From the NCBI GenBank assembly GCA_026770705.1, contig JANJGN010000121.1:186001-250000 (forward strand): a stretch of 64,000 nucleotides of DNA, written 5' to 3'. The position numbers and the translations under genes are program-made. The DNA comes from Isurus oxyrinchus (lineage: Eukaryota). This document shows positions 34,022-63,341 of this stretch, in pieces. Below the pieces are notes generated by a model. It had not been told where the DNA came from, searched no databases, and was given only the letters and a program-made list of their open reading frames with translations. Each line of letters begins with the position of its first letter. The stretch's first letter is position 1.

Positions 34022-34161
34022 ACAGTGGAGGAGAGATTCTGCACGTGATCCTGATCCTGGGAATACGAGCTGTGCTATTCCTTGTGGCTGTGGTTATCAC
34101 TATCGTTGGAGTCTGTGTCTGGGAGAGACAAACAGTGAAAGGAAGTCGACAGACTGTTTGA
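34022..34161 (+). CDS. Gene B transmembrane exon with intramembrane Arg
   Basis: Acceptor ttctctag, phase 1; YSGGEILHVILILGIRAVLFLVAVVITIVGVCVWERQTVKGSRQTV*. Confidence 0.85.
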
Positions 34162-34269
34162 AGCTTTGTACAGCAACAATCTGGTCAGTCAGTGCGGACA
34201 AATAACGTGTGATGTTGGGTTAAGTTGTAATGAAATTGGTCAGTGTCCTGGTTAGAATCACCTTCGTAT

Positions 34270-34880
34270 CAGAGAGGCATTCCAGCACAGTGGGAGCCCA
34301 TTCAGCCCATTGAGTCCATGCTGTCTCTCTGTAGAGCAATCCAGTCAGTCCCATTCCCCCGCTCTATCCCCGTATCCCTGTGAGTTTATTTCCCCTCAAG
34401 TGTCCAACCAATTTCCTTTTGAAATCGTTCATCCTCTCCGCTTCCACCATCCTCGTAGGCAGCGAGTTCCAGCTCATTACCACTCGCTGTGTAAAAAAGT
34501 TCCTCCTCACATCCCCCCTCTGCCCACAACCTTCAATCTGTGTCCCCCAGTCCTTGTACCATCAGCTAATGGCTACAGCTTCTCTTCGTCTACCGTATCT
34601 AAACCCATCATCATCTTGTACACCTCGATCAGATCCCCCCTCAATTTCCTTTGTTCCAAGGAGAACAACCCCAGCTTCTCCAACCCAACCTTGTAGATAA
34701 AATCCCTCATCCCTGGACCCATTCTGCTCAATCTCCTCCCCACCCTCTCAAGGACCCTCACTTCCTTCCCAAAGTGAGGAGACCAGAACTGGACACAATA
34801 CTCTAGTTGTGACCTAACCAGAGCTTTATAAATGTTCAGCATAACCTCCCTGTGTTTGTACTCAGTCCCTCAATTTATGA
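34270..34880 (-). mobile_element. CR1 LINE 3' fragment
   Basis: YKALVRSQLEYCVQFWSP, LRGDLIEVYK and 3' tail. Confidence 0.88.
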
Positions 34881-34901
34881 AAAGCTTATTCTTTCCATCA
34901 G

Positions 34902-35250
34902 CACAAACAGCAATTTCCAAGCGGACTCCCATCAGCAGACAGAGTGCAATGAAACATCGGCATGCCTGCTTCTTAATGTACGGAGAGAAACCTGGAACGA
35001 GAGATTCTCCTTCTTCTCCTCAGCAAGCTGAAACTTTTCCTTATACCTGGTGCTCCCCAGTCCTGCTGTGTGGACACATCATAACCACGGCATTGTCTGG
35101 CTGTGTGCAGTCAACATGGTCGAATAGGAATGAACAGAAATGTGACGTTGCTAAACTCTGTTCTCTGATTGGAATGTGCTTTCTGAATGCTGCACCTTTT
35201 TCATGCTGCAATAGATTGTAAGAAGCATTTGGGTTATGAATAAAATTACA
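34902..35250 (+). other. Gene B probable last exon / 3'UTR with polyA signal
   Basis: Acceptor ctttccatcag; 35095-35255 is homologous to the gene D 3'UTR (reverse complement of 61105-61270); AATAAA 35239-35244. Confidence 0.65.
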
Positions 35251-35589
35251 TTGATTAACTCAAGTGATTAAAATGCTCAGCCTGTTCTGTAGATATTTAA
35301 AGATTAAAATTCTTATTTTGCTGCAAAATTCTTGGCTCAAAGACATTACTTCATGTTGTCACGTTTTCCAATCAGATGAATTCCTCTGTCCATCTTTATA
35401 ATAGAAATTTCCAATGTAAACATGTCACATTGTAGCTGCACACTCTTGCCAGTGGCTGGTGTGATACCAAAGCTGTCTTGCTGCTGAGAAACAGCGAGAA
35501 ATATTCCTGTTGTGTGCATGAACTTCATGTTAGCATGAGACACAGGCATCAGATGAAATTTTGTGCAATTTGTACAATGTTCTTTAGAC

Positions 35590-35938
35590 AGCACAGCACT
35601 CCCTCAGTTCAAACCCTCCAACAGCGCAGCACTCCCTCAGATCAGACCCTCCGACAGTGCAGCACTTCCTCAGTTCAGACCCTCCGACAATGCAGCACTC
35701 CCTCAGTTCATACCCTCCGACAGTGCAGCACTCCCTCAGTTCAAACCCTCCGACAGTGCAGCACTCCCTCATTTCAGAGCCTCCGACAGTGCAGCACTCC
35801 CTCAGTTCAGAGCCTCCGAAAGTGCAGCATTCCCTCAGTTCAGACCCTCTGACAGTGCAACACTCCCTCAGCTCAGACCCTCCGACAGTGCAGCACTCCC
35901 TCAGTACTGAACCTCCGACAGTGCCGCACTACCTCAGT
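35590..35938 (-). repeat. 33-bp minisatellite array (variant cagttcag units)
   Basis: Tandem units. Confidence 0.9.
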
Positions 35939-37439
35939 TCTTCTCCGCCGATGCTGCCAGACCTGCTGAGTTTTCCCACGTATTTCTGTTTCTGTTTCTG
36001 TTTTGAATTTCCAGCATCCGCAGTTTTTTTGCTTTTAGTGCTGGGCAGTTCCTCAGCAAGGATTCGGGCCACAAAACATTGCGAGTGCTGTGGGTCTGCG
36101 CCACGATTTAGAGAGCTGTGCTTGGCACGCCTATTCTAGTCCCAGTCCAGTGTGGTGGGGACAGCCTGGCAGTCCAGGGTTGGTCGTGCCCAGCATGGTG
36201 TGCAGGACGTGGTCAGTCCCTCACACACGTCCATCCTGGGGGTGGGTGGCTTGATACTAGGCCGCAGGTGGCACAATCCCAGTCAGGGGAGGCATCTGCA
36301 GCCGGTCAGTGGGGAGCAGGTAATATAGAGGGTAGGGGTGGGGGTGGAAAAGAGGGGGGCCGGTGGTCTCTGTAAGTCACAGTACAATGGGCCTCTAGTT
36401 GGAGAGAGGTCAGGTCTACATGGGGCATTGGGATGTCAACATCAGACAGTCTAGGGAGGAGGACTGGGATGTCAACCCCCAACACAATAAGATCAAGGAT
36501 TAGAGAGGAAGGGAGGAGACTGATTGGAAGGAGGGGAATGTGCACATTATGCTCCTCCAGCACGATGGGAGGGACTGTGATGGTTACGGGGGTGGGGGGG
36601 GGGGTGAAGTGTGAGGGGATAGACGCTTACCTGGTGGTATTGCCTCAGCCCCACCCTTTTTCAAGCTGATCCAATGTCGCAGTTGAAGAATAAGCTACAA
36701 AACAAATTGGCAGGGGAGGTCTCCCAGGGCCTGTGGGAGACATCACCCACTGCATCTTCGGCCTGGTTGAAGGGGCACCCGAACAATTCCGGCTTTTCCA
36801 AATGATGAGGAAGACACAGCTGCACCCCGAGTCCCCTACTGGGGATCCAGAAGGTTGCAATAGCGCTGCGAGGGACTCATGGGCTCCACAGTGACTCCCT
36901 AATTAGCGACTGGAAGGTTTATGTTCATTTATCTTTATTATCCGTTCATATTGAGCAATGGAGCTCCTGATTTGTCACCTTTCTGTACCTCGTCCAATGC
37001 TTCTGTTATCAGGACTTCCACATCGATGTGAAAGAGCCATGATGATAGCAGACAGTCGCACAATGGGAATGGCACTAGGCCAGTGATCCAGAGGCCCAGG
37101 TGAATGCTTTGAAGGCACGGGTTCAAATCCCACCACGGCAGCTGGAGGAATTTCAATTCGATTAATCAATAAATTTAATTGATTGATACATTTTTTTCTT
37201 ATTCATTTCAGGGATGTTGGTGTCGCTGACTAGGCCAGTATTTGTTGCCCATCCCCATTTGCCTTTGAGAACATCTGGATATCTGAGTTAGGATCAGGAG
37301 TAGGTCACTCAGCCCCTCGAACCTGCTCCGCCATTCAGTAAGATCATGGCTGATCTGATTGTCACCTCAACCTCACATTCCTGCCTACCCCCAATGACCT
37401 TTCACCCCATTGTTAATCAAGAATCTATCTAGCTCTGTG

Positions 37440-41890: not shown

Positions 41891-42007
41891 CTAATATCTA
41901 CAGCAGAGACCACAAGTCTCATTTGGTTCTCTCCAATTACAGCAGTTACAGCAGAATATGCAGAGCTGCTGTCTGCCCATTCTCTTCTGGCGCTGCAGCA
42001 AGGAGCC
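41891..42007 (-). CDS. HAMP: Hepcidin exon 3: furin site and mature peptide
   Basis: Acceptor cttttccag, phase 0; GSLLQRQKR-MGRQQLCIFCCNCCNWREPNETCGLCCRY*; 8-Cys hepcidin pattern CxxCCxCC...CGxCC. Confidence 0.95.
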   Translation of the reverse strand, partial: GSLLQRQKRMGRQQLCIFCCNCCNWREPNETCGLCCRY

Positions 42008-42079
42008 CTGGAAAAGCAGGAGTACAATAGGTGAGAACATTCCGGAAAGAAAGAAGGCATCATTTCAATCAGGCGCGTC

Positions 42080-42772
42080 ATTGGAAGGAGGATGGCGCAT
42101 TTCTATAGCGCCTTTCCCCTCCTCAGGATGGCCCAAAGTGTTCCACAGCTGAAGGAAGGACTTTTTCTGAAGTGAGCTCACCGCTGTAATGTAGGAAACG
42201 CAGCAGGCAATTCACGCACAGCAAGATCCCACAAACAGAAATGTGATAATGGCCCCGATTTTCAGTTTTTTACCAATGTCAGTTGAGGGATAAATGTTTG
42301 CCCCAGGAAAGCGGACATAACTCCACCCCATCCACCCCCCACCACCCCCTCCACACATACCCCCAACTCCTGACGCACTTCATCTAAATTGTGGCCATGG
42401 AATCCTCTACATCCATCTGAGAGGGCAGATGTTGTCTCAGTTTAACATCTCATCTGAAAGACAGCGCCTTCAACAGTGCAGCACCCCCTCAGTACTGACC
42501 CTCCGACAGTGCAGCACTCCCTCAGTACTGACCGTCTGACAATGCAGCACCCCCTCAGTACTGACCCTCCAACAGTGCAGCACTCCCTCAGTACTGGCCG
42601 TCTGACAATGCAGCACCCCCTCAGTACTGACCCTCCGACTGTGCAGTCCCCCGCCGGTACTGACCCTCTGACAGTGCAGCACTCCAAGACTGACCGTCTG
42701 ACAATGCAGCACCCCCTCAGTACTGACCCTCCGACTGTGCTGCCCCCCCGCCGGTACTGACCCTCCGACAGC
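42080..42772. mobile_element. Deu-domain-type SINE running into a 33-bp array (HAMP intron 2)
   Basis: gcacagcaagatcccacaaacag...tttaacatctcatctgaaagacag, then the array from about 42470. Confidence 0.75.
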
Positions 42773-43179
42773 TCGGTAATTTCTCAATTATGCCTGGTGG
42801 TCCTTTTAACTCAGAGCTGAGAGTCGCAGAGAATCGAGCACACATCCTGAACTGACACATTGCAAAATGTCCCAGCCCACATTACCGGAGCGTAAATCAG
42901 AGAGAAGTCTAACACTGAGTCACATATGGAGATATTAGGGATAGGTGACCAAAAGCTTGGTCAAAGATGTCAGTTTTTAAGGAACGTCTTAAAGGAGAGA
43001 GAGAGAGAAAGAGAGAGAGGCAGAGAGGTTAAGGGAGGGTATTCCGGAGCTCAGGGCCCCAGGCAGCTGAAGGCACGGCCACCAATGGTGGAGCGATGGG
43101 AATCAGGGGGACCCGGGAGATGCAGTAATGTCAGAGATTTTGGAGGAACATCGGGACCGGAGGAGGTGTTCTCCTGCTC

Positions 43180-43605
43180 CATATCTCTCTCTCTCTTCCT
43201 GTCATCCACTCCTCCTCTCCCTGTCTCTCTCTCTCCTACTCTTCCGCTCAATTGCCCTCTCTCCCAATCTTTCTCTCCTCTCTCCCTTTTCCTGTCTCTC
43301 TCCCTCTCTCTCCCCTGTCTCATTCTCCCACTCTGTATCTCTCCCTCTCTCTCACACTATTTTTGTACCTTTCGCTCACTCTGTAACTCTCCCTTTCCTG
43401 TTAATTTCTCTCTCTTGGACAATCTCTCTTCCCTTTTCACTTTCCCTCACTCTGCATCTCTTCTTTAATTTCTCCCTCTGTCACTCTCTCCCACCTATGT
43501 TCTTTCCCTTTCACCCCTCCCCGTCCCACTCTGTGTCTCTCTCTTCCAATCCCTCCCTCCCCCATTCCATCCCTCTCTCCGACTCTCGACTCCCAGCCTC
43601 TCTTT
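43180..43605. repeat. CT-rich low-complexity tract
   Basis: Polypyrimidine composition. Confidence 0.85.
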
Positions 43606-43870
43606 AACCCACTCCCAGGCTGGATCAGTCTCCCTCTCACTATTCCCGGCGTGGGTTACATTTAAAATTCCTGTGGGGATATGTTCACTTCCTTGGAATT
43701 GCCTCTTCCCAGCTTTGCAAAAAAAGCGGGGGGGGGGGGCTCGATTTCAAACATGCCTCCTGAGTATAACCGAGACAGACTGCCACTGAAATCAGCTTGA
43801 AATCAGAAAACTTTCTGTGGAAGAAACGAGCAGGGAGAAACCTTAAAATAAGGAATGAATTTCCACCTAC

Positions 43871-43927
43871 CGTGTCCGGGGAATCCACAGATTTCTCAAT
43901 CGTCGAAGAACCTAAAGCAGTGTCAAC
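43871..43927 (-). CDS. HAMP: Hepcidin exon 2: propeptide VDTALGSSTIEKSVDSPDT
   Basis: ttctttttgcag/gtaggt, 57 nt, open only in phase 0, in frame with exon 3. Confidence 0.85.
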
Positions 43928-44024
43928 CTGCAAAAAGAAAGAATTTATCAGGGAGAAAGTGAGAGGAGGATTGAGGGAGAGGGAGAGAGAGAGAGAGAGG
44001 TACAGGAGAGAGAGGGGGAGGAGG

Positions 44025-44630
44025 ACAGACTTGCATTTCTCTAACGCCTTTCACCACATCCCAAAGCATTTCACAGCCACTGAAGGATGTTTTTGAAGTG
44101 CACTCACACTGTAGGAAATGTGGCAGCTGATTTGTGCACAGCAAGATCCCACAAATAGCAATGTGATCATGGCCTAGATCATCTGTTTTTGGTGATGTTT
44201 GGTGAGGGATAAATATTGGTCCCAGGACACCGGGGAGAACACCCCCTGCTCTTCCTCCAAATAGTGGCTGTGGGATCTTTCACACCCGCCCGAGAGGGCA
44301 GACGGGGGACTCGGTTTAATGTCTCATTCAACATTGTTGTGCTCCCTCAGTACTAACCCTTTGACACTGCAGCACTCCCTCAGTACTAACCCTTCGATAG
44401 TGCTGCACTCCCTCAGTACTGACCCTCCGACAGTGCAACACTTCCACAGTACTGACCCTGTAACAATGCAGCACTTCCTCAGTACTGACCTCCGACAGTA
44501 TAGCACTCACTCAGTACTGTCCCTCCAATAGTGCAATACTTCCACACTACTGACCCTCTGACAGTGCAGCACTCCCTCAGCACGGAGTGTTGACCGACGT
44601 TATGGGACTGAATTCCCTGGAGTGAGACTC
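44025..44630. mobile_element. Deu-domain-type SINE with internal 33-bp array (HAMP intron 1)
   Basis: Same family as 42080; array 44340-44580. Confidence 0.75.
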
Positions 44631-44654
44631 AGACCAGAGATTTAGGTAGGGTTG

Positions 44655-45580
44655 TTCCGGCTGGAGGAGGTTACAGAGATAGGGAGGGTTGTAGAGGCTG
44701 TAGGAGGTAACAGAGATAGGGAGGATTCTAGAGGCTGTAGGAGGTTACAGAGATAGGGAGGGTTGTAGGGGCTGTAGGAGGTTACAGAGATAGGGAGGTG
44801 AGTAGGGGCTGTAGGAGGTTAAAGAGATGGGGGGGTTGTGGGGGCTGTAGGAGGTTACAGAGGTAGGGAGGGTTGTAGAGGCTGGAGGAGGTTACCAAAA
44901 TAGATACTGTTGTAGGGGCCACAGTAGGTTACAGAGAAAGGGAGAGTTATAGTGTGGAGAGGACGTTATAGAGTTCATGAGCATTGTAGGGGCTGGAGGA
45001 GGTTACAGTGATTCTGAGGGTCGTGGGGCCTGGAGGAGGTTACAGTGATTCTGAGGGTCGTGGGGCCTGGAGGAGGTTACAGAGATAGGGAGGGTTGTAG
45101 GGTCTAGAGGAGGTTACAGTGATCATGAGTGTTGTGGGGCCTGGGGGAGGTTACAGAGATAGGTAGGGTTGTAGGGGCTGGAGGAGGTTACAGAGATAGG
45201 GAGGTTTATAGGGGCTGGAGGAGGTTACAGAGATAGGGAGGGTTGTAGGGGCTGGAGGAGGTTACGGAGATAGGGAGTGTTGTAGGGGCTGGAGGAGGTA
45301 ACAGATATAGGGACAGTTGTAGGGGCTGGAGGAAGTTACAGAGATAGGGAGGGTTGTAGGGGCTGGAGGAGGTTACAGATATAGGGAGGGTTGTAGCGGC
45401 TGGAGAAGGTTACAGAGATAGGGAGGGGTGTAGGAGCTGGAGGAGGTTACAGAGATAGGGAGGGTTGTAAGGCCTGGTGGAGGTTACAGAGATAGGGAGG
45501 GTTGTAGGGGCTGGAGGAGTTTACAGAGATAGGGAGGGTTGTACGGGCTGGAGGAGGTTACAGAGATAGGGAGTGGCTGA
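44655..45580 (+). repeat. 37-bp G-rich minisatellite in HAMP intron 1
   Basis: Tandem ggggctggaggaggttacagagatagggagggttgta. Confidence 0.95.
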
Positions 45581-45775
45581 GGAGGGATTGAAAACAAGAA
45601 TGAGAATTTCAGGGGAAATGACAGAAGGAAATGATGTTAAATTCATAGAGGGCGACAATATTAAAGGCACGAACATAATAATATCAAACTGCGGAAGTGA
45701 CCAGTCTATCTGGGTGGTGGACGTAGAGTCATGTGCAAGAAACACCTCACCCAGAGGGACATCTCTTAGCTTAAC

Positions 45776-45867
45776 CTCGACAAGGAGAAGAAGTGACTCA
45801 GCTGCAGGGAGAGCAGCAAAGTCAGAGTGAACAAGACAAGTCGCCATTTCATCTGGGAGCTTCCCAT
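45776..45867 (-). CDS. HAMP: Hepcidin exon 1 coding part: signal peptide MGSSQMKWRLVLFTLTLLLSLQLSH...
   Basis: Hydrophobic leader about 70 bp downstream of a TATA box; donor AG|gttaag gives 92 nt, one short of phase 0. Confidence 0.75.
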
Positions 45868-45937
45868 CTCTGCCTGTCTCTTCTGATCTTCTGGCTCTGC
45901 TTTGATGCTTTGGTTTGTAACTAGAGGAGCTTCCTGC

Positions 45938-45944
45938 TCTTATA
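45938..45944 (-). promoter_or_regulatory. HAMP TATA box (TATAAGA)
   Basis: About 70 bp upstream of the ATG. Confidence 0.65.
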
Positions 45945-46076
45945 CCTGAAACACTTGAAGGGGACAGCCGGGGGTGGGTTGCTGTGTGGTATCACACCCA
46001 TTTCTGGATATTGCAGTGTCGATGTTCCCTGTCCCACTGGCCTGGGACCAGCAGTAAGGTCACTGGGACATTGACT

Positions 46077-46088
46077 GTCTGGCGCCGA
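46077..46088 (-). promoter_or_regulatory. BMP/SMAD response element in the HAMP promoter
   Basis: TCGGCGCCAGAC: GGCGCC core (46081-46086) plus abutting AGAC Smad-binding element. Confidence 0.65.
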
Positions 46089-51049: not shown

Positions 51050-51080
<31 letters not shown>

Positions 51081-51468: not shown

Positions 51469-51598
51469 NNNNNNNNNNNNNNNNNNNNNNNNNNNNNNNN
51501 NNNNNNNNNNNNNNNNNNNNNNNNNNNNNNNNNNNNNNNNNNNNNNNNNNNNNNNNNNNNNNNNNNNNNNNNNNNNNNNNNNNNNNNNNNNNNNNNNN
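51469..51598. other. Assembly gap
   Basis: Run of N. Confidence 1.
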
Positions 51599-51714
51599 GT
51601 ACACACTCTTTCTAACTCTTTTTCTCTCTCACAGACTCTCTCTGTCTCTCTCGCTCTCTCTCTCTCTCACACACACTCTCTCTAATACGGAAGGTTGTGG
51701 TTTTAAGACGTGCT

Positions 51715-52130
51715 CATGATTTCTGCTCAAAACCCAGGCAGATTCTCCCCAGTGAGGGAGTACTGAGGGTGTGCTGCACTGTCAGAGGGTCAGTACTGAG
51801 GGAGTGCTGCACTGTCAGAGGGTCAGTACTGAGGTAGTGCTGCACTGTCAGAGGGTCAGTAGTGAGGGAGTGCTGCACTGTCAGAGGGTCAGTACTGAGG
51901 GAGTGCTGCACTGTCAGAGGGTCAGTACTGAGGGAGTGCTGCACTGTCAGAACTGTCGTAATTCAGATGATGTTTGAAATTAGCAACATGCCTCATGTAA
52001 AATTCTATATCATCAGCTCAATATAAATAGATTAGTCCTGTACGTTTCACTTCACTGCAAATTGTTCATGGTTTCATTTCCTTGTTAACCAGGCTCATGT
52101 GATGACTATTTTTAAATAATGTTTGTTATT
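51715..52130. repeat. Local duplicate (with 33-bp array) of 53985-54620
   Basis: ctcaaaacccag...ctccccagtgagggag and attcagatgatgtttgaaattagcaacatgcctcatgt shared. Confidence 0.88.
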
Positions 52131-53039
52131 TGGAACAAGGGGCCATGCCTGAACAGATAACTGTCGGATCAAGCAGCTGGGTTTTTTCTTGAACCTGGCT
52201 TCATTCAGATGTTTGCTGCTGGACATGAGATCATTAATGTGTGAATGTAGAATCGGAGTCACCTCAGTGAACAGCAGCATTGGTTGAACAGCCTGATCTG
52301 CAATAAGAACTGCTGAACACAATGTCCGTTCAGAACAGCTCGGTCCCCGATCAGAGAAACAGCCTCAGACAGAACCAACTGACGCTGGAATCCATACAAT
52401 TCATCAACGTGTTGGGAGTTAGTTTGATGTCGGAGATGGAGTGTTACTGGGAAGGATGGAACCCGTCAGGATGAACAGCTCGATGTACGACAAGGAAAGG
52501 ATGAGCTAAGAGGGGTTGGTCACGGACAGACGGAGCATGTGAAGACTCAACAAGCTAATGGCAGGTGAAGAGCTGGAAAGGTGTCTTTTCAACACAAGGT
52601 TTAGACACAGAACTCGATGTTTGATTGGGTATTTCAAACCAGAGAAACTCTTTACAGGGTGAATGGACCTTGTCAATAATCCATCCAGCCAACCTCGCCT
52701 GGAGATTAGTCCAATATTAGACACTAAACCGAGACCCCCGTCTGCCCTCTCGGGCGGGTGTGAAAGATCCCACAGCCACTATTTGGAGGAAGAGCAGGGG
52801 GGAGATCTCCCCGGTGTCCTGGCACCAATATTTATCCCTCAACCAACATCACCAAAAACAGATGATCACATTGCTGTTTGTGGGAGCTTGCTGTGCGCTA
52901 ATTGGCTGCTGCGTTTCCTACATTACAACAGTAACCACACTTCGAAAAAAGGGTGAACTCAACTGTAAAGTGTTCTGGGACATCCAGAGACCATGCTGTA
53001 CAGAAGAGATTTGACAGGAGCAGCAAGTGTTTTACTTAC

Positions 53040-53122
53040 AGGAGAATGAGTCCCCAGGGTTGTAGAGTCAATCCTGTCAGATGAATGTCTAACTGGAGAC
53101 ACTTCAGGGAGCTGATCTAATT
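53040..53122 (-). other. Candidate small non-coding exon, possibly 5'UTR of gene C
   Basis: catttccag acceptor and gtaagt donor only. Confidence 0.25.
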
Positions 53123-53469
53123 CTGGAAATGTTCAGTTTACCAGGATCGGAGGAGAGATGATCTTCCTCTCCTGACTGCATCGGACACGAGGTGAACTAG
53201 CTCTGGGAGGAGGGTCAGTGTTAACCCAGTTTTTCTGTGTTTGAGGGAGATGTGAAACTGGGGAAGTCACGTGGTTTTTTGGTGTGGTCACTCCATGTCT
53301 TTATTTGGTGCAGCACTCATTTAGTTCATGTCATTGTTTCAATGCTACAAAACCACAGCGCATTCTGGACTATTCCTGCCTGACCTGCTGTCAGATACAC
53401 GCAGTCTGACAGAGAGGCGGAAAAGTGGTCCCTAGCAACGTGTGAAACTGTAAACTCGGCTCAGTCAGA

Positions 53470-53950
53470 ATGCACATGCAGACACACACACATACGTACA
53501 CACATTTTCTCTTGTTCATTCTTTTAAACACACACACTCCCTCTCAAATACACACACCCTCTCTCGCACACTCCTTCTCTCAAACACATACACCCTCTCT
53601 CTCAAACACACACACACACGCTCTCACGCACACGCTCTCTCACATACACACTCTCTCTTTCACACACACACTATCTAACACACACAGATTCTCTCTCTTT
53701 CTTTCTCTCTCACACATAAGCTCTCTCTCTATCACAGACATTCCCTTTCTCTCACACACACTCTCTCTCTCACACAATTCAGCTACCTCACTCTCTCATG
53801 CACACACACTCTACCTCTCTTTCGCTCTCTCACACATTTTCTCTTTCTCTCTATCCTTCTCTCTCGCACACATACGCACTGTCACTCTCTCACACACACA
53901 TTGTCTCTCTTTCTCACACACGCACTCACTCTCTCTCTCTCTCTCTCTCC
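53470..53950. repeat. CA/CT low-complexity tract
   Basis: Composition. Confidence 0.9.
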
Positions 53951-54017
53951 AAGACAGCAGGTTGGGGTTTTCAAACCGTCTCAAGGTTTCAGCTCAAAAC
54001 CCAGAAGGACTCTCCCC

Positions 54018-54445
54018 AGTGAGGGAGTGCTGAGGGAGTGCTGCACTGTTGGAGGGTCAATATTGAGGGAGTGCTGCACTGTCAGAGGGTCAGTACTGAG
54101 GGAGTGCTGCACTGTCAGGAGGTCAGTACTGAGGGAGACCCTGCTCTATCAAAGGGTCAGTACTGAGGCAGTGCTGAACTGTCAGAGGGTCAGTACTTAG
54201 GGAGTGCTGCACTGTCAGAGGGTCAGTATTGAGGGAGTGCTGCACTGTTGGAGGGTTAGCACTGAGGGAGTGCTGCACTTCCAGAGGGTCAGTGCTGAGG
54301 GAATGCTGCATTGTCAGAGGGTCAGTACTGAGGGAGTGCTGCACTCCCAGAGGGTCAATACTGAAGGAGTGCTGCACTCTCAAATGGTCAATGCTGAGGG
54401 AGTGCTGCACTGTCAGAGGGTGGACACTGAGGGAATGCTGCTCTG
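54018..54445 (+). repeat. 33-bp minisatellite array
   Basis: Tandem units. Confidence 0.93.
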
Positions 54446-54799
54446 TCAGACCTGCCATATTTCAGATGATGTTTGAAATTAGCAACATGCCTCATGTATA
54501 ATTATATATCATCAACTCAAAATAAATAGATTATTCCTGTACGTTTCACTTTACTGTAAATTGTTTGCAGTTTCATCTCCTTAGAAGCCAGGTTTGTGTG
54601 ATCACTATTTTTAAATAACGTTAATAATAAAGATGCGACAATCCACATGCACACATGTACACACACACACACACTCACTCACAAGTGTACATAGACAGAC
54701 ACACACTCACTCACACATGTTCACCCAGACACACACACACAGATACACACCTACTCACACAAGCAGACAGACAGATACACACACAGACACACAAGTCAT

Positions 54800-57015
54800 A
54801 ATTAAAAAGTTAGAGTCCAATAAAAATTTAAAGGAATATATGATTAATACAATTGCTTGTCTTTGAGGCGTAGATTTTTGACATTTGCAGCTGTTCAAGG
54901 TTAATTGGTTTCCTGTGGCATCCTTGTAGTGATCTGATTCAGATTTGCACTTTGTTGGAGATGCTCTGTTAGCTTCAGAAAGAGAGAGAGAGAGAGAGAG
55001 AATTTCTGCTCTTTTCCAGCAGTGTATTTGAGTGACTGCCATCTTTCTTTTTCCTCCTACTTTCTCTTATATCTGCTTGACAGAACCTGTTGTTAAACTC
55101 CTGTCTGTATATTCCCAAAGGGAATTCGATCAGCATGTCTTGCATTCATTGTCGCAGACCAAGTAATCCCTTTTTTGACTTTTGCATCTCTGAAACATTT
55201 GATGCATTTCAAGATATAAATCAACAGGAGATGGAGGCATTTCATCCTCCACAAGAGGTTTTGAATGATTGATGAATATCTGCATGGTGAGCAGTTCCCA
55301 TTACCTTGATAGACCTACAGTGATCAGAGTCCAGCGCTTTGCATTTTTAATGGAGCCCCTCTTTCAAGTGGACCCTGACACACCTCAGTGAGAACTTTCA
55401 TGCAACATGTCTGTAGTGCAATTCATTTGAAGCTTTCCAGAGAAGTGATCAAGTTTGCAGTATCAGCAATCAGGTGACTCGTGACAGCCATTTTTGATCA
55501 GTGCCTAATCTAGTACTTTTGAAAAACAGGTCTCCTTTAAACAGTTCAATACATTTTTGGCACGTTGTTTCAGTTAAAGGAAGCTCTGTTATGACATAAC
55601 AGATGGTAAATGCTGAGCTGTTCAAATCCTGGAGGGAAACTTGAAACAACTGTCACAACTAATTTCCAACTTGTATGTTTTGAGATGTGGGCTTTGAATT
55701 CAGTAGTAATGAGATTAAGATATTTAAGAGGTAATTATGGTTGGTTGAAAAAAAGGGTTTAAAATATATTTTCCCCCAAATACAATTTCCAAAACAAGTC
55801 TCTTTGATTGTTAAGAATGAACCAATTAAACCATGTTTGGTGGAGTCAAAGAAAGAGTAAGTTTATTAGTTACCTAACTGGAGGAAAAATAATTAAAATG
55901 GGACAAAACACACACACTAACGCACAGACNNNNNNNNNNNNNNNNNNNNNNNNNNNNNNNNNNNNNNNNNNNNNNNNNNNNNNNNNNNNNNNNNNNNNNN
56001 NNNNNNNNNNNNNNNNNNNNNNNNNNNNNNNNNNNNNNNNNNNNNNNNNNNNNNNNNNNNNNNNNNNNNNNNNNNNNNNNNNNNNNNNNNNNNNNNNNNN
56101 NNNNNNNNNNNNNNNNNNNNNNNNNNNNNNNNNNNNNNNNNNNNNNNNNNNNNNNNNNNNNNNNNNNNNNNNNNNNNNNNNNNNNNNNNNNNNNNNNNNN
56201 NNNNNNNNNNNNNNNNNNNNNNNNNNNNAATTATAGAGTCCAATAAAAAATTAAAAGAGTCGTTTGCTTGTACTGCAGCGTAGGCTGTGAAGTTTGAAGC
56301 TGTTTTAAATTAGTTGGTTTTCTGTAGATTCCTGTATTTTATCTGGCTCAGACTTGCACATTGTTGAAGACACTCTGTTAACTTCAGACAGAGAGAGAGA
56401 GAGTGGGAGAAATCATTTCTGCTCTTTTCCAGCAGTGTTTGTGGAAGACTGCCATATTTCTTTTTCCCCTCCTTTCTCTGAAATCTGCTTGGCAGAACCA
56501 TTTGTTAAACTCCTGTCTGTATATCCCTGAAGTCAATTCAATCAGCATGTTTTACATTCATTGTTATAGACCAAATATTCCCATTTTTTTATCTTTGCAT
56601 CTCTGAAACCTTTGATGCATTTCAAGATATAAATCAACAGGAGATGGGGGTATTGTATCCTCCACAGGGGGTTTTGAATGGCTGATGATTATCCGCTTGG
56701 TGAGCAGTTCCCACTGTTTTGATTGAACTACAGCTGATCAAAGTCCAGCACTTTACATTTTAATGCCTTCCTTTTAAGATTGTCCCTGTTTGAAGTGAAC
56801 CCTGACACACCCCAGGTGTGAACTTCCATGCAACAGGTCTGCAGTGCAATTCATTTAACCTTTCCAGAGAAGTGATCAACTTCACAGTATCAGCAATCAG
56901 GTGACTTGTGTCAGCCATTTTTGATCTGTGTACAATCTTGTATTTCTTTGAAAAACAGATCACTTTTAGACAGTTCAATACGTCTTTGGTCTGTTAGTTA
57001 AGTTGTAGGAAGCTC
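54800..57015. repeat. Diverged tandem duplication 54800-55590 / 56229-57015
   Basis: Shared agagtccaataaaaa, tttgatgcatttcaagatataaatcaacaggagatgg and cagtatcagcaatcaggtgact, with many substitutions. Confidence 0.9.
55930..56228. other. Assembly gap
   Basis: Run of N. Confidence 1.
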
Positions 57016-57134
57016 TTAATCGCAGTTTGTTGTCGTTGGGATATTGTCTTTGTGTGTGTGTTTGTGTGTGTGAGTGAGTGTGTGAGTGAATGTGTGTGTG
57101 TGTGTGTGAATGTGAGTGTGATTGTGTCTGTCTG

Positions 57135-57380
57135 NNNNNNNNNNNNNNNNNNNNNNNNNNNNNNNNNNNNNNNNNNNNNNNNNNNNNNNNNNNNNNNNNN
57201 NNNNNNNNNNNNNNNNNNNNNNNNNNNNNNNNNNNNNNNNNNNNNNNNNNNNNNNNNNNNNNNNNNNNNNNNNNNNNNNNNNNNNNNNNNNNNNNNNNNN
57301 NNNNNNNNNNNNNNNNNNNNNNNNNNNNNNNNNNNNNNNNNNNNNNNNNNNNNNNNNNNNNNNNNNNNNNNNNNNNNNNN
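57135..57380. other. Assembly gap
   Basis: Run of N. Confidence 1.
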
Positions 57381-58620: not shown

Positions 58621-59039
58621 TCATAAAACTGTGCCAGACACTTCAAAAATCTCTTCAATTCAACCTTGTAAACGCAGTAGGAAAAATCCCAGGGGGCCAT
58701 TGTATCTTAGCAACATCGTAAACTTGGCCAAAAGAATCCCCCTGGTCACTCCTGAGTGTTACTAATATTGTAAACACAAATTATACAGCTCCTCCAGTCT
58801 CTGAGAAGCAAAGGTAGGACACTAGAGCACCACCACTGGTAGGAGGCTGTAATTACAGTGTGACATGTTTACATGGGAATGTTCCATTACCAATGACACA
58901 GGAACTTAAATAATCAGAAGGACATGTGATAACAGGAAGTGGTGCCTTGGAGAATGGAATTATTCACTAGAGTACGTATTTAATTTGATAAAAATGTACA
59001 GAAATGTCAGGGCATTTTAATTGCTTCTTTTTTGTATTC

Positions 59040-61100
59040 ATTCACTGACACTGGCTAGGCCAGAATTTATTGCCCATCCCTACTTGTCCTTGAGAATATG
59101 GTGGTGATCTGCCCTCCTGAGCTGCTGCAGTCCCTGTGGTGTATGTACACCCACAGAACTGTTTGGGAGGGAGTTGCAGGATTCTGACCCAGCGACAGTG
59201 AAGGAACGGTGATATATTTCCAAGTGAGGATGGTAAGTGGCTTGGAGGGGAACTTCCAGGTGGCGGTGTTCCCATGTGTCTGCTGCCCTTGTCCTTCTAG
59301 ATGGTAGTGGTCATGTGTTTGGAAGGTGCTGTCGAAGGAGGCTTGGTGACTCCCTGCGTTGCATCTTGTAGATGGTACACACACTGCTGCCACTGTGCGT
59401 CAGTTGTAGAGGGACAGAATGTTTGTGGATGGGGTGCAAATCAAGCGGGGCTGCTTTGTTCTGGACGGTGTCGAGCTTCTTGAGTGTTGTTGGAGCTGTA
59501 CTCATCCAGGAAAGTGGCGAGTATTCCATCACACTCCTGACCTGTGCCTTGAGGTTGGTGGACAGGCTTTGGGGAGTCAGGAGGCGAGTTACTCACCACA
59601 GGATTCCCAGGCTCTGGCCTGCTCTTATACTCACAGTTTTTATATGGCTAGTCCAGTTCAGTTTCTAGTCAATGGTAACCCCCAGAGTGTTGATAGTGGG
59701 GGATTCAGCAATGGTGATGCTATTTGACATTAAGGGGAGATGGATATATTCTCTCTGGTTGGAGATGGTCATTGCCTGGCACTTGTGTGGCATGAATGTT
59801 ACTTGCCACTTGTCAGGCCAAGCCTGGATATTGTCCAGGTCTTGCTGCATTTGGACATGGACTGCTTCAGTATCTGATGAGTCATGAATGATGTTGAACA
59901 TTGTGCAATCATCAGTGACCATCCATAATTCTGACCATCTGATAGAATGAATGTCATTGATGAAGCAGCTGAAGATGGTTGGGCCTAGGACACTACCCTG
60001 AGCAACTCCTGCAGTGATGTCCTGGAACTGAGATGACTGACTTCCAACAACCACAACCGCCTTCCTTTGTACTTGGTATGAATCCAACGAGTGGAGAGTT
60101 TTCCCTGTGACATGACATGGCATATGATGTGTGCTTGGTGCTCCAAATCCACAAGGGAAAATTGGTCATGCTATCACAATAGTTTTGCAATTTGTATTTA
60201 TTACAGGAAGCGTGCACTGAATTCAGGAGTAATGAGTTGACCACAACCTTTAGACATTTTAAAAATTCAATTACGATATTTATTAACAAAATAAAAGATT
60301 TCAAGCACAGACATAATACCACAGTTAGTTACAGCTAAAATAAATTCTCAAATTCCTAATTAACCTGACTCCCAGTTACAGAGCCTGTTTAAGGCAACAG
60401 TCCAAAATAAGATTTTAGATTAAAAACAAATCCAGCGAGTTAACACAGCACACACTTGACACTGGAATTCTAAATGGATTTCTCCAACTTTATTTACTGA
60501 ACATAACAGACTTATGCACAAATGCCTGGAGGCTTCTTAAAGTCTATTTCACACACTCCTGTTAGATCTTACATGGCCCCCAACATAGCCTTTCATTCTC
60601 CTTTATACATGTTTCTCTCTCTTTGATGTGTAAATTCTTTGGAACTGTACCTTTCCCATAATATAAACTTTCATGTTGCCAATATTGTCAATGAAGTTTG
60701 GGTAAAATTTAAAAAAAAACTCCTTAGCTTTGCTTATTGGGCTTGTCCTAAACAGACCAACATCCCTTTGAAATCTAAACAACCCCTTCACACCTTACAT
60801 GCTAACACAGCCTCCATGTGTTCTCATTAGCATTTCAAGTACATTTCTACATCTAGCTTCTTTTGATAATCTCAAACTTGCAGTCTACCTGACTCCAGAT
60901 GTAATTAAACTACACAGACAGACACATCTACACGCACACCCATAAACCTAGTTTACTACAAACCAGGAAAATATTAAGCAAATTATTATACTTTCGTACC
61001 ACCCCTGATTCCCATTGACTCCAGTTATGCTCGGGCTCCTAGAGGCCACACTCGGTCAAATGCAGCCTTAATGTTAAGGGCAGTCACTCTCACCTCACCT
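59040..61100 (-). mobile_element. Degenerate LINE, same family as 37440-39390
   Basis: GVAQGSVLGP, WQVTFMPHKC, MEYSPLSW; LINE sequence resumes at 61002 after an insertion. Confidence 0.88.
60106..61001. mobile_element. Probable solo LTR, about 900 bp
   Basis: TG...CA ends, imperfect TCCC/CCCC flanks, cleanly splits the LINE. Confidence 0.6.
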
Positions 61101-61294
61101 TGTATTAACAGATGTAAAGTTATACATAACCCATAAGCTTCTCACAATCTTTTACAGCATGGAAAAAGGTGCAGCATTCAGAAAGCTCACTCAGAACAGA
61201 TTTAAAAAGAAGTTGAGCAACATCATATTTGTGTTCATTACTATTTGGCCATGTTGGCTGCACACACCCCACAGCCCCACTCCCTGTTACACAC

Positions 61295-61543
61295 TCAGTT
61301 TTTCTGGAACCTGATCTGTGTGTATTCCGTGTCCTCGCTCCTGTGCACAGTCCTGTCACTGCTGGGCAGCTTTGAAAAGTTGATGTTGGCGTAGAGAAGG
61401 TCGGCGGTATTGTCGGGGTTCCCATGTCCAACATCGCCTCCCACTGGACCTTCAGAGAGATCCCGGGGAGCTGGGGTCTCCCCCTCACTAGTTGTGTCTC
61501 TGGTTGTTTCCCGGGGCTCAGAAATCAGCAAGTTCTGTTCATC
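61295..61543 (-). CDS. Siglec-like gene D last exon: ITIM plus ITSM-like motif
   Basis: ...DLLYANINFSKLP...EDTEYTQIRFQKN*; acceptor at 61543 or 61534 (both phase 0). Confidence 0.88.
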   Translation of the reverse strand, partial: DEQNLLISEPRETTRDTTSEGETPAPRDLSEGPVGGDVGHGNPDNTADLLYANINFSKLPSSDRTVHRSEDTEYTQIRFQKN

Positions 61544-61724
61544 CTCCAGAGAAATGGAAACAGAAGACATCCTCACATCATTTACTGGCACTGATAGGGT
61601 TAAATTATTGTGCAGCCTCATTAGTGTCAGTCGTGTCTCAGTGGGTTTAAGCCTTTTTTTCACTCTCTTTCTCTGTCTCTCTTTCTCTCTCGCTTTCTCT
61701 CTCTCTTAATAATTTAATCTCTAT

Positions 61725-62255
61725 CGCACTCCAACAGTGCAGCACTCCCTCAGTACTGACCCTCTGACAGTGCAGCACTCCCTCAGTACTGACCCTCTGA
61801 CAGTGCAGCAGTCCCTCACTACTGACCCTCCGACAGTGCAGTACTCCCTCAGTACTGACCCTCTGACAGTGCAGCACTCCCTCAGTACTGACCCTCTGAC
61901 AGTGCAGCACTCCCTCAGTACTGACCCTCTGACAGTCCAGCACTCCCTCAGTACTGACCCTCTGACAGTGCAGCACTTCCTCAGCACTGATACTCCGAAC
62001 GTCCAGCACACGATCAGTACTGACCATCAGACAGTGCAACACTCCCTCAGTACTGACACTCTGACAGTGCAACACTCCCTCAGTACTGACCCTCCGACAG
62101 TGCTGCACTCCCTCAGTACTGATCCTCTGACAGTGCAGCACTCCCTCAGTACTGACCCTCCGACAGTGCAGCACTCCCTCAGTACTGACACTCCGACAGT
62201 GCATCACTCCCTCACTACTGACCCTCTGACAGTGCAGCACTCCCTCACTACTGAC
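61725..62255 (-). repeat. 33-bp minisatellite array in gene D intron
   Basis: Tandem units. Confidence 0.95.
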
Positions 62256-62288
62256 ATCAGGTGCCTTGTCATTATTGTGTTCAGGTTT
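62256..62288 (-). CDS. Gene D candidate 33-nt cytoplasmic exon KPEHNNDKAPD
   Basis: Long pyrimidine tract plus ccag; donor gtcagt; phase 0-0. Confidence 0.5.
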
Positions 62289-62468
62289 CTGGTCAAAGAG
62301 CGAGTGATGGAGGGAGACAGAGGCAGGGAGCGAGAGACAGTGCTGACCACTGAGCCATTGCTGACTTCACAGGGCGATATCTGTGTGTAACCCGGTTGAG
62401 AATCTGGTATACGTGTTGTCTACACACTGAGGTTGAAGCTTTGGAGTGAGTGTAAACAGCTCCTGTAC

Positions 62469-62550
62469 CTGGTGCTTCACAGAGAGTGACCTGAGGGTCA
62501 ATGCAATGTAATTGGTCCCTGAACCTCTCTCCTCCATCGCTGTCTTTCTC
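62469..62550 (-). CDS. Gene D cytoplasmic exon RKTAMEERGSGTNYIALTLRSLSVKHQ
   Basis: ttgcag / CAG|gtacag, phase 2-0, in frame with the TM exon. Confidence 0.75.
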
Positions 62551-63244
62551 CTGCAATAACACAATATCACACTGTGGTTATCATATAGCAGAGAGTCAGT
62601 GCAGCACAGACACAGAGCCCAGTGTAACCTTACACCAACGACTGGACTGTCTCTAGTTCCAATAAGGGATATCAGCGTGACATCACTATAATGGAAGTGT
62701 GTCATGTGATCCAATCTCAATTTGACATTTGCTTTGAGCAGAACACACACTCACAGCTCTGATGCCTTCAAGCTTTCTCCGTATGTATAACTGTTCTCGT
62801 GCCGAGTCTTGATAAACAAATCATTAACATTCTCACCAAATCCCCTATGAGTGATTGGTGTTTTCTGTCTTATACAGTAAATAAGCCTAAGGTATAATAT
62901 CATTATAATAACACGCCATATCTTTGACCCCCCCTCCACCCCTGCTCTTCCCCCCATAGCCCTTCAAATGTTCCCCCTTCAAATATTTATCCAATTCCCC
63001 TTTTGAAAGTTCCTATTGAATCTGCTTCCAGCGCCCTTTCAGGCAGCACCTTCCAGATCACAGCAACTGATTATTATTCATCTGGATAACGGGCAATGAA
63101 AAACACTCTCTGGATCATAACGGATAAAGAGACCAGTTAGGGAGAGGCATCTGGCGCTTAACACAAGGGAAACAATCACCGACTTAAGGAAAGAACATTG
63201 AAGCAAATGTTTATATTAAAATCAAGTTAAATCTTCAGACTTAC

Positions 63245-63341
63245 TTTCTCACACAGATGAAGATGAAGATTCCAGCCAGGAAAACACTCAACATGATCCC
63301 AGCCGTGAACAATCCTACTGTCCATTTACTGGAGTCTCTAC
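63245..63341 (-). CDS. Gene D transmembrane exon (uncharged TM)
   Basis: tttttacag/gtaagt, phase 1-2; RDSSKWTVGLFTAGIMLSVFLAGIFIFICVRK. Confidence 0.88.

What the first reader, a model, noticed from the sequence alone, without database searches (positions are those of the whole stretch)
34022..63341. Paired activating and inhibitory Siglec-like receptor system
Seen: gene B TM carries an Arg (ILGIRAVLF, codon 34066) and a short Tyr-free tail. Gene D has a neutral TM and LLYANI plus TEYTQI, and the two share homologous 3'UTRs. Known: a charged TM residue recruits DAP12 or FcR-gamma, and ITIM plus TEYxxI is the CD33-related Siglec tail signature (Siglec-5/14 pairing). Inference: an independent or ancient paired sialic-acid receptor family in this lineage. 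The gene D Ig domains are outside the window, so shared ligand specificity is untested.
Basis: partly seen in the sequence, partly recalled or inferred. Interest (0 to 1): 0.82.

Follow-up and report, generated by a model that had tools for sequence, protein, structure and literature searches.

The report
Shark activating/inhibitory Siglec-like receptor locus
This stretch of a shark genome holds parts of a sialic-acid-lectin (Siglec-like) receptor gene cluster. It contains an "activating-type" membrane anchor with a buried arginine and an "inhibitory-type" tail with ITIM/ITSM motifs, but the arginine copy here is a dead duplicate, and such genes are already predicted automatically in other sharks and rays.

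Summary
Gene B's last coding exon (34022-34182) encodes a membrane span with Arg (CGA 34066-68) and a 13-residue Tyr-free tail. Gene D (minus strand) has a neutral TM (63341-63245) and a tail with LLYANI and TEYTQI. The two share about 365 bp of 3' non-coding sequence.

The three N gaps lie in intergenic simple repeats and touch no exon. They only make the B-D linkage depend on scaffolding.

- B is a pseudogene in this assembly: its start codon is ATA, and a +2 bp frameshift gives a stop at 27112.
- B's inverted twin A is intact as far as the window shows.
- RNA-type contigs of two shark species splice an A-like C2 exon to an Arg-TM exon and on to a 3' exon.
- D's Ig exons lie outside the window. 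A great white shark model matching D's distinctive cytoplasmic exon has V, C2a and C2b domains 83-97% identical to A/B.
- NCBI models in about 20 sharks and rays show both forms, with V domains interleaved.

I found no paper describing this. This scan has already reported the same thing elsewhere in this genome. Adaptor pairing and sialic-acid binding are inferred, not shown.

The parts
34022..34182 (+). Gene B TM exon, activating type. Arg codon CGA 34066-34068, stop TGA 34160-34162, splice donor after 34182.
   Evidence: Sequence and translation. 87-91% identical to the C-termini of great white shark models P0001/P0011/P0012. RNA-type contigs cover 34020-34182 and join 34182 to 34901 with GT..AG.
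34901..35291 (+). Gene B non-coding 3' exon. AATAAA at 35239, ATTAAA at 35267. Its 3' part from 35099 is homologous to D's 3'UTR.
   Evidence: X20 contig record 29 (850 nt) spans 34020-34182 plus 34901-35291. Polyadenylation motifs. Homology.
35099..35461 (+). Block shared between B and D: 3'UTR and the flank just beyond it.
   Evidence: blastn gives 80% over 171 bp and 68% over 203 bp, collinear with D. ATTAAA at B 35267 corresponds to D 59021.
32035..32316 (+). Gene B C2b (I-set-like) exon, phase 1/1.
   Evidence: Pfam Ig_3 5.8e-13 and I-set 5.2e-11. 95-97% identical to C2b units of P0017/P0109/P0100. Exon ends confirmed by C2b-to-C2b joints in RNA-type contigs. DNA-run depth is about 200 times the neighbouring intron.
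28682..28978 (+). Gene B C2a exon.
   Evidence: Pfam C2-set_2 4.9e-08. 96% identical to P0001. Borders.
27068..27438 (+). Gene B Siglec V-set exon. It has a +2 bp insertion at about 27094-27099 and a resulting in-frame TGA at 27112-27114.
   Evidence: Alignment with A shows GTGAAAAACTCC in B against GTG--ACACTCC in A. B's exon is 371 nt against 369 nt in A. PDB best hit is Siglec-5 at 6.6e-14, with YFFRIE aligned to YFFRVE.
26163..26202 (+). Gene B leader exon relic. The start codon ATG is ATA, and there is no in-frame ATG upstream within the exon.
   Evidence: Alignment with A's leader. tblastn with shark leader peptides.
63245..63341 (-). Gene D TM exon with a neutral span.
   Evidence: Translation. 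Borders. 90-97% identical to P0038/P0104/P0109.
62469..62550 (-). Gene D first cytoplasmic exon (RKTAMEERGSGTNYIALTLRSLSVKHQ).
   Evidence: 26 of 27 residues identical to P0109, the only model seen with GSGTNYIAL.
61295..61543 (-). Gene D last coding exon. ITIM LLYANI 61399-61382, ITSM TEYTQI 61330-61313, stop 61297-61295.
   Evidence: 79-83% identical to the tails of P0038/P0018/P0100/P0102.
58828..61269 (-). Gene D 3'UTR. Homology blocks 61269-61099 and 59026-58828 are separated by an inserted retroelement of about 2.07 kb (59027-61098).
   Evidence: Reverse-transcriptase-like ORFs at 59311-60123.
4900..7997 (-). Gene A, the intact inverted twin of B. Leader 7997-7958 (ATG present), V exon 6424-6056, C2a exon 5196-4900. 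Its TM exon lies outside the window.
   Evidence: The V domain is 95% identical to the Arg-TM model P0011. The last 30 letters of A's C2a exon equal the sequence that RNA-type contigs join to the Arg-TM exon.
41891..42040 (-). Hepcidin (HAMP) last exon, lying between B and D. It serves as a synteny marker.
   Evidence: Pfam Hepcidin 2.9e-07, 31.1 bits against a cut-off of 27.
51469..57380 (.). Intergenic stretch holding the three assembly gaps (51469-51598, 55930-56228, 57135-57380).
   Evidence: Gap flanks are CA/TC simple repeats. No protein match between 49055 and 61298.

Best explanation
The window is a piece of a large, rearranging Siglec-like receptor gene cluster of a shark. It lies next to the hepcidin gene.

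The family is built from shuffled exon modules:
- one or more Siglec-type V exons,
- a C2a exon,
- zero to many C2b exons,
- one of at least three membrane/tail cassettes.

Gene B carries the activating-type cassette. This is a TM exon with an intramembrane arginine about one third of the way into the helix, then a stop 13 residues after the span, then a spliced non-coding 3' exon. Gene D carries the inhibitory cassette: a neutral TM plus two cytoplasmic exons with an ITIM (LLYANI) and an ITSM (TEYTQI).

The 3' exon of the activating cassette still shares its distal part with D's 3'UTR. This suggests that the activating cassette descends from an inhibitory-type gene that acquired a new TM exon with an early stop.

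In this assembly B itself is dead (start codon lost, +2 frameshift in the V exon). The working activating gene here is more likely its inverted twin A or a close paralogue.

Inferred mechanism, not shown:
- The V domain binds sialylated glycans through the conserved arginine.
- The Arg-TM forms pair with an Asp-bearing ITAM adaptor of the DAP12 or FcR-gamma type and activate.
- The D-type forms recruit SHP-type phosphatases and inhibit.
- Together they give a paired receptor system at family level.
For: Shown directly:
- Siglec V-set with the aligned arginine and cysteine pattern.
- Exon borders and phases of B and D.
- The B-D 3' homology.
- B's two lesions.

Transcript evidence:
- RNA-type contigs from two studies of the window's species (X20, X1) and one of a related species (X17) abut a C2a-type exon directly onto the Arg-TM exon. 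The joint from the TM exon to the 3' exon was seen in X20 (GT..AG) and, as a loose end, in X17. The DNA control X2 shows none of these joints among those listed.
- The stop codon is kept in the related species as TAA instead of TGA.

Other species:
- The same Arg-TM C-terminus is in NCBI models of Carcharodon, Scyliorhinus canicula, S. torazame and Chiloscyllium. A related one is in the stingray Hypanus.
- D-type TM, ITIM and ITSM appear in models of Carcharodon, Cetorhinus, Scyliorhinus, Mustelus, Hemiscyllium and Chiloscyllium.
- D-type models P0104, P0020 and P0109 have V domains 83-90% and C2a domains 92-99% identical to A/B.
- Tail types interleave in the V tree, and S. canicula P0002 (Arg-TM) is sister to P0019 (ITIM).
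- P0109 matches D's distinctive GSGTNYIAL exon at 26 of 27 residues. The contig length listed for it equals that of the Arg-TM model P0011.
Against: - D's own Ig exons were not seen.
- B's own transcript was not shown. The contigs read A at 34075 and C at 34106, unlike the window, and carry an A-like upstream exon. The TM exon occurs about 20 times in the genome, judging by DNA-run depth.
- The RNA label of the runs is a guess. X1 also covers introns.
- B's lesions rest on one assembly and were not checked with reads.
- The coding part of D's last exon has no detectable counterpart in B's 3' exon, so descent from an inhibitory gene rests on about 365 bp of non-coding similarity.
- No adaptor, phosphatase or glycan binding was tested.
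- V identity of 83-90% allows the ligand specificities to differ.
Confidence: 0.75

Rival explanations
1. B is a working gene. The ATA start and the +2 bp insertion are assembly errors or belong to one null allele, so B and D form a live activating/inhibitory pair at this locus.
For: All other B exons are open with good splice sites. The insertion lies in an A-run, GAAAAAC, where long-read assemblies make mistakes.
Against: There are two independent lesions in two exons, and the start-codon change is a substitution, not a homopolymer slip. The change is net +2 with a substitution, which is not a typical one-base error. No run showed the window's own letters at 34075/34106, apart from a trace in X1.
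Confidence: 0.1
2. The shared 3' sequence of B and D is a dispersed repeat that landed near both genes. It says nothing about common descent of the two cassettes.
For: The window is full of mobile elements and a 33-bp satellite. DNA-run depth over the block is about 20 times that of the unique intron.
Against: The copy number equals that of the Arg-TM exon, not that of the neighbouring SINE/LINE pieces, which run about 200-500 times the intron. The block sits at the same place in both genes, is collinear over two segments, includes matching ATTAAA signals, and is part of the spliced 3' exon in transcripts. Only these two copies are in 64 kb.
Confidence: 0.1
3. The Arg-TM short-tail proteins are not activating receptors. 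The arginine might serve another partner or membrane retention, or the proteins might act as decoys.
For: No adaptor was tested and none was looked for in this genome. Charged TM residues also occur in receptors with other partners (my knowledge).
Against: Arginine at a fixed helix position, with a short motif-free tail, is conserved from sharks to a stingray. It sits alongside ITIM-bearing relatives with near-identical ectodomains. That is the pattern of known DAP12/FcR-gamma-coupled paired receptors (PMC13358205, PMC6288428).
Confidence: 0.1

Closest known systems
Human Siglec-5/Siglec-14 and Siglec-11/Siglec-16 paired receptors
   Same: Siglec V-set with the canonical arginine. One partner has an ITIM plus a distal tyrosine motif. 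The other has a basic TM residue and a short tail. The genes are closely linked and their ectodomains are similar (PMC4042635, PMC6288428, PMC13358205).
   Different: Ectodomain identity here is 83-90% in V (92-99% in C2a), not near-identity maintained by gene conversion. The system is family-wide: about 20 Arg-TM copies, many modular architectures, and at least three tail cassettes. It is shared by sharks and a ray, so it is far older than, and most likely independent of, the primate pairs. Adaptor use is unknown.
CD33-related Siglecs of mammals
   Same: Best solved-structure matches are Siglec-5, -7, -8 and CD33. The tail has a proximal ITIM and a distal TEYxxI about 23 residues apart. The family is expanding rapidly and contains pseudogenes. 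NCBI names the shark models CD33-like or Siglec-5/7/8/10/12/13/14.
   Different: The locus lies beside HAMP. In humans HAMP neighbours MAG and CD22, not the CD33 cluster (my knowledge). MAG scores almost as well as CD33. Orthology was not tested. The literature I found says fish lack CD33-related Siglecs, on the basis of teleosts (PMC7226832).
Other paired Ig-superfamily receptor families (KIR, LILR, SIRP, PILR, CEACAM1/3, teleost NITR)
   Same: Multigene clusters mix ITIM-bearing members with charged-TM short-tail members. Activating members are thought to derive from inhibitory ones. Duplication, exon shuffling and pseudogenes are frequent (PMC5112662, PMC13358205).
   Different: The binding domain here is a Siglec-type lectin V-set, not a KIR, LILR or CEACAM domain. 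The expected ligand is a glycan.

Membership tests
[quoted passage not shown] | N-terminal V-set domain with the conserved F-strand arginine that binds sialic acid | tested here: met
   Pfam V-set 6.7e-10 and Ig_CD22 1.4e-09. In the phmmer search against PDB, YFFRIE aligns to YFFRVE of Siglec-5 (E 6.6e-14) and YFFRME of Siglec-7. This holds for A and B. D's V domain was not seen.
[quoted passage not shown] | Siglec cysteine pattern: an intrasheet B-E pair plus an extra Cys near the B strand, and no F-strand Cys | tested here: met
   GSCVQIPC ... GDCSLII, with no Cys in GPYFFRIE. The cysteines align with those of Siglec-5.
[quoted passage not shown] | V-set followed by C2-set domains and a single TM | tested here: met
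   C2-set_2 and I-set/Ig_3 exons, then the TM exon.
[quoted passage not shown] | Binds sialylated glycans | not testable with these tools
   Needs a recombinant ectodomain and a glycan array with an Arg-to-Ala control.
CD33-related Siglec subfamily | Cytoplasmic proximal ITIM plus distal ITIM-like/ITSM motif | tested here: met
   D has LLYANI and TEYTQI, with the tyrosines 23 residues apart. The motifs are conserved in D-type shark models.
CD33-related Siglec subfamily | Orthology or clade membership with mammalian CD33-related genes, and CD33-cluster synteny | tested here: inconclusive
   PDB scores are Siglec-5/7/8/CD33 at 1e-14 to 1e-11, MAG at 7e-12, sialoadhesin at 2e-09, CD22 at 1e-03 and Siglec-15 at 2e-03. 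The neighbour is HAMP, which points to the MAG/CD22 region. I built no tree with tetrapod Siglecs.
Paired activating/inhibitory receptors | Activating member: basic residue inside the TM helix and a short tail without signalling motifs | tested here: met
   B's exon. In the AlphaFold model of P0001 the helix spans 229-261 with Arg at 240, though model confidence is low. The feature is conserved in 8 models from 6 species.
Paired activating/inhibitory receptors | Inhibitory member with an ITIM | tested here: met
   D's last exon.
Paired activating/inhibitory receptors | Highly similar ectodomains in the two members | tested here: inconclusive
By proxy, P0109 (which matches D's mid exon at 26 of 27) has V 83-86%, C2a 92% and C2b 97% identity to A/B, and P0104 has V 90% and C2a 98-99%. 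These are similar but not near-identical.
Paired activating/inhibitory receptors | Both members intact and expressed | tested here: not met
   This applies to B. Its start codon is lost and its V exon is frameshifted. The spliced Arg-TM contigs come from A or a paralogue. At family level the feature is met.
Paired activating/inhibitory receptors | Activating member associates with an ITAM adaptor and inhibitory member with SHP phosphatases | not testable with these tools
   Needs co-immunoprecipitation and signalling assays.
Paired activating/inhibitory receptors | Close genetic linkage | tested here: inconclusive
   B's 3' end and D's 3' end are about 23.5 kb apart and convergent, but three scaffold gaps lie between them. 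In Carcharodon, the contig length listed for the Arg-TM model P0011 equals that listed for the D-like model P0109.

The most novel reading that the evidence does not exclude
Elasmobranchs have a large CD33-like Siglec family of their own, anchored at the ancestral HAMP/MAG/CD22 neighbourhood. In it, interchangeable V, C2a and C2b exons are combined with an arginine-TM activating cassette or with one of two ITIM-bearing inhibitory cassettes. This would be a sialic-acid-sensing paired-receptor system hundreds of millions of years older than the primate Siglec pairs and independent of them. It is missing from the Siglec literature I could search, where the one paper that addresses fish states that they lack CD33-related Siglecs.
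Probability: 0.5. Interest if true: 0.65.

Novelty: new member of a known kind. Interest (0 to 1): 0.5.

Why it matters
Reviews treat paired and CD33-type Siglecs as a mammalian, fast-evolving innovation. The teleost work I found states that fish lack CD33-related Siglecs (PMC7226832).

A conserved Arg-TM/ITIM Siglec-like system in sharks and rays, next to HAMP, would do two things. It would push glycan-sensing paired receptors back to early jawed vertebrates. It would also support the idea that all Siglecs come from one ancestral region.

For this particular locus the value is smaller. It adds one dead activating copy, one probable live twin and half of an inhibitory gene to a family that gene-prediction pipelines and this scan have already picked up.

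Tried and rejected
- I looked for a relic of D's coding tail in B's 3' exon (34901-35098) by sensitive blastn, global alignment and three-frame translation. I found no ITIM in the would-be frame and no alignable sequence.
- The AlphaFold2 model of P0001 from a 16-row alignment was poor: mean pLDDT 61.5, with the V domain around 50. I ran no fold search. Only the TM helix and the arginine position were taken from the model, with caution.
- treekit gave no answer. I made the tree with MAFFT and FastTree instead.
- Four paper searches for shark, elasmobranch or cartilaginous-fish Siglecs, one broader CD33-related-Siglec/fish search and one for shark DAP12 found nothing on the subject. The Cao & Crocker review is not held.
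- I did not run the large representative-protein search. The word search and family scans had already identified the proteins.
- Exons were searched one by one by reference.
- Read laying could cover only 6 kb once. I spent it on the TM exon, so the V-exon frameshift and D remain unchecked by reads.
- I rejected the idea that the Arg-TM exon is an alternative 3' end of an ITIM gene. No ITIM exon follows it in B, and the transcripts run into a non-coding exon.

Full report
**What is in the window**

Composition, ORFs and protein matches show a vertebrate locus crowded with mobile elements and a 33-bp satellite. All protein matches are to sharks and rays. It contains five gene-like units.
- Gene A, minus strand: leader 7997-7958, V exon 6424-6056, C2a exon 5196-4900.
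- Gene B, plus strand, the inverted duplicate of A: leader relic 26163-26202, V 27068-27438, C2a 28682-28978, C2b 32035-32316, TM exon 34022-34182, 3' exon 34901 to about 35291.
- A hepcidin gene on the minus strand. Its last exon is 42040-41891 (Pfam Hepcidin 2.9e-07).
- Gene C, a V-set relic on the minus strand (49055-48735), cut by a retroelement.
- Gene D, minus strand: the 3' half only, with TM exon 63341-63245, middle exon 62550-62469 and last coding exon 61543-61295.

**Checking the observation**

B's TM exon follows an AG, is in phase 1 like the Ig exons before it, and reads SGGEILHVILILGIRAVLFLVAVVITIVGVCVWERQTVKGSRQTV followed by a stop. The arginine is CGA at 34066-34068 and the tail has no tyrosine.

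D's TM (GRDSSKWTVGLFTAGIMLSVFLAGIFIFICVRK) has no charged residue in the span. Its tail holds LLYANI and TEYTQI, and all three exons have canonical borders and compatible phases.

The 3' similarity is real and collinear. B 35099-35264 matches D 61269-61099 at 80%. B 35262-35461 matches D 59026-58828 at 68%. An insert of about 2.07 kb carrying reverse-transcriptase ORFs separates the two blocks in D. ATTAAA signals correspond (B 35267, D 59021).

**The assembly gaps**

The three N runs sit in CA/TC simple repeats between gene C and D's 3' flank. No shark protein matches anything between 49055 and 61298. They interrupt no exon and no homology block, so frame continuity is not an issue. They do mean that the order and distance of B and D rest on scaffolding. 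I did not fill them or look up their letters.

**Family identity**

A's and B's V exons match Pfam V-set and the CD22-type first Ig domain. The next exons are C2-set and I-set-like.

Against solved structures, the best matches are:
- Siglec-5 (6.6e-14)
- Siglec-7 and Siglec-8 (about 1.5e-12)
- CD33 (6e-12)
- MAG (7e-12)
- sialoadhesin (2e-09)

CD22 and Siglec-15 match only weakly. The alignment places YFFRIE on YFFRVE of Siglec-5, so the sialic-acid-binding arginine is present. It also reproduces the Siglec cysteine pattern.

**B is a pseudogene in this assembly**

Aligned with A (95% identical, introns included), B's V exon has two extra bases 27 nt after the acceptor. This gives a TGA at 27112-27114. 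B's leader exon reads ATA where A has ATG, with a stop codon and no ATG upstream in frame. All other B exons are open. A shows neither lesion.

Between A and B the V exon carries 9 non-synonymous and 6 synonymous differences.

- A contig of 850 nt from run X20, guessed to be RNA and from the window's species, covers 34020-34182 and 34901-35291 with a GT..AG joint. The TM exon therefore runs 20 nt past its stop and is spliced to a non-coding 3' exon. That short distance should spare the mRNA from nonsense-mediated decay (my inference).
- In X20, in X1 (same species, another study) and in X17 (a related species), the letters just before the TM exon are ...CTCGTACTAACTGTGCA. This is the end of a C2a exon and is identical to A's. 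It is not B's (CTGACTGTGCTAT) and it is not the C2b exon.
- X17 also joins the end of the TM exon to the 3' exon, and reads TAA where the window has TGA. The early stop is therefore conserved.
- The DNA run X2 shows none of these joints among those listed.
- All four runs read A at 34075 (Leu to Ile) and C at 34106 (Val to Ala). That matches the great white shark proteins, not the window.
- DNA-run depth over the TM exon and 3' exon is about 20 times that of the unique intron. Over the C2b exon it is about 200 times.

The expressed form is therefore V-C2a-TM(Arg), from A or a close paralogue. B's own expression is not shown. The RNA label of the runs is a guess, and X1 also covers introns. The spliced joints are what count.

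**Other sharks and rays**

Word searches with A's V exon, with P0001 and with the tail of P0018 returned more than 100 NCBI gene models from about 20 elasmobranch species. They are named CD33-like, Siglec-5/7/8/10/11/12/13/14/15 or MAG-like.

Arg-TM models:
- P0001 (Carcharodon, 270 aa) ends ...SERTLVLTVQDSGGEILHVILILGIRAVIFLVAVVITIAGVCVWEGQTGKGNRQPV. This is exactly the junction and the variants seen in the contigs.
- The same cassette closes models in Scyliorhinus canicula, where one is annotated "Siglec-14 isoform X2", and in S. torazame.
- In Chiloscyllium it follows a C2b exon, as in B.
- A related one (ILLISLAVRGVLFLL..., short tail) is in the stingray Hypanus.

D-type models (GRDSSKWTVGLLTAGIMLSVFLAGIFIFICVRK ... 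LLYxNI ... TEYAQIRFQKN) occur in Carcharodon, Cetorhinus, Scyliorhinus, Mustelus, Hemiscyllium and Chiloscyllium. Their ectodomains range from V-C2a to five C2b units.

A third cassette (WKAGLLAAGICLSVGLSGFFIFKCVRK with a long tail ending DDLYANCDLADDSVYGNV) also exists. It has relics in the window.

**Are the two forms paired?**

I used three kinds of proxy evidence.
- P0109 (Carcharodon, 489 aa, V-C2a-C2b-C2b-TM) matches D's distinctive middle exon at 26 of 27 residues, including GSGTNYIAL. The other models read VSGTSDIAL there.
  - Its TM matches D's at 29 of 31.
  - Its V is 83-86% identical to A/B, its C2a 92% and its C2b 97%.
- P0104 has a D-type tail, with V 90% and C2a 98-99% identical to A/B. 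P0020 has V 87% and C2a 96-97% identical.
- In a maximum-likelihood tree of V domains, Arg-TM and ITIM forms interleave within species. The S. canicula Arg-TM model P0002 is sister to the ITIM model P0019, at 83% identity.

This is the pattern of paired receptor families. It is looser than what I recall for Siglec-5/14, which are nearly identical in their binding domains.

**How it most likely works**

Shown: the domain build, the motifs, the splicing and the conservation.

Inferred from established knowledge of paired receptors (PMC13358205, PMC6288428, PMC4042635):
- The V domain binds sialoglycans.
- The TM arginine docks onto the aspartate of an ITAM adaptor.
- The ITIM/ITSM tail recruits SHP phosphatases.

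The shared 3' block suggests that the activating cassette arose from an inhibitory-type gene. This is the direction usually proposed for activating receptors. It rests on about 365 bp only, since the coding part of D's last exon has no detectable counterpart in B.

**Novelty**

In the held literature I found no description of shark or ray Siglecs beyond one line in the whale shark genome paper. Teleost work states that fish lack CD33-related Siglecs (PMC7226832).

The genes are, however, already in automatic annotation. This scan has also already reported Arg-TM Siglec-like genes elsewhere in this genome (s1-868598, s1-871221, s1-866858, s1-865446). I therefore rate this as a new member of a known kind, of moderate interest.

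**Limits**

- Only one 6-kb read layout was possible.

Noticed in passing
window 4900-8541 (-) and 25620-28978 (+): A and B are arms of an inverted duplication, about 95% identical with introns included. They flank a 33-bp satellite array of about 10 kb (8.8-19.3 kb). Each arm also carries, upstream of the leader, relics of a cytoplasmic exon of the third tail type (RGSSTGRGHSAQAERVGS..., at 8449-8541 (-) and 25620-25751 (+)). The duplicated unit therefore included the 3' part of an upstream gene.
   Followed up: partly
window 21427-21543 (-) and 19172-19297 (-): An orphan last exon of the third tail type (QKKDEKDLEMKSNRGVNPDTDDDLYANCDFAKDSVYGNL) is 82% identical to the C-terminus of Cetorhinus P0017. 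It has an ITIM-like SVYGNL. An earlier cytoplasmic exon lies downstream of it, so the two are out of order and rearranged.
   Followed up: partly
window 48735-49992 (-): Gene C has a leader-like ORF and a V-set exon matching Cetorhinus P0099/P0103. In those models the sialic-acid arginine position reads Tyr (YYFYVD). In the window the exon is cut at ...EDSDVY by a gag-like retroelement (47888-48745).
   Followed up: partly
window 32035-32316: Depth in a DNA run over the C2b exon is about 200 times that of the neighbouring unique intron. RNA-type contigs join C2b exons head to tail (32316 to 32035). This fits genes with long stalks of repeated C2b units, such as Cetorhinus P0100 with five and Carcharodon P0102 with four.
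   Followed up: partly
window 41891-46200 (-): A hepcidin gene lies between the Siglec-like genes. In humans HAMP neighbours MAG and CD22 (my knowledge), so this cluster may mark the ancestral Siglec region. The mature peptide reads ...CIFCCNCCNWREPNETCGLCCRY.
   Followed up: partly
proteins P0053, P0061-P0063 (skates; not in the window): Skate models end in ...WKC(I/L)(V/A)ALIVLAV...VWAAC(C/F)RNK. That is a Lys at the outer edge of the TM and an 8-residue tail. It may be a second, lysine-based activating-type cassette in batoids.
   Followed up: no
proteins P0020, P0087, P0104, P0096-P0098 (not in the window): Many D-type paralogues read LLYANPQVF, with Pro at +3, so the proximal ITIM is spoiled while TEYAQI is kept. 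Some models carry two tail units in tandem. D in the window keeps the intact LLYANI.
   Followed up: no
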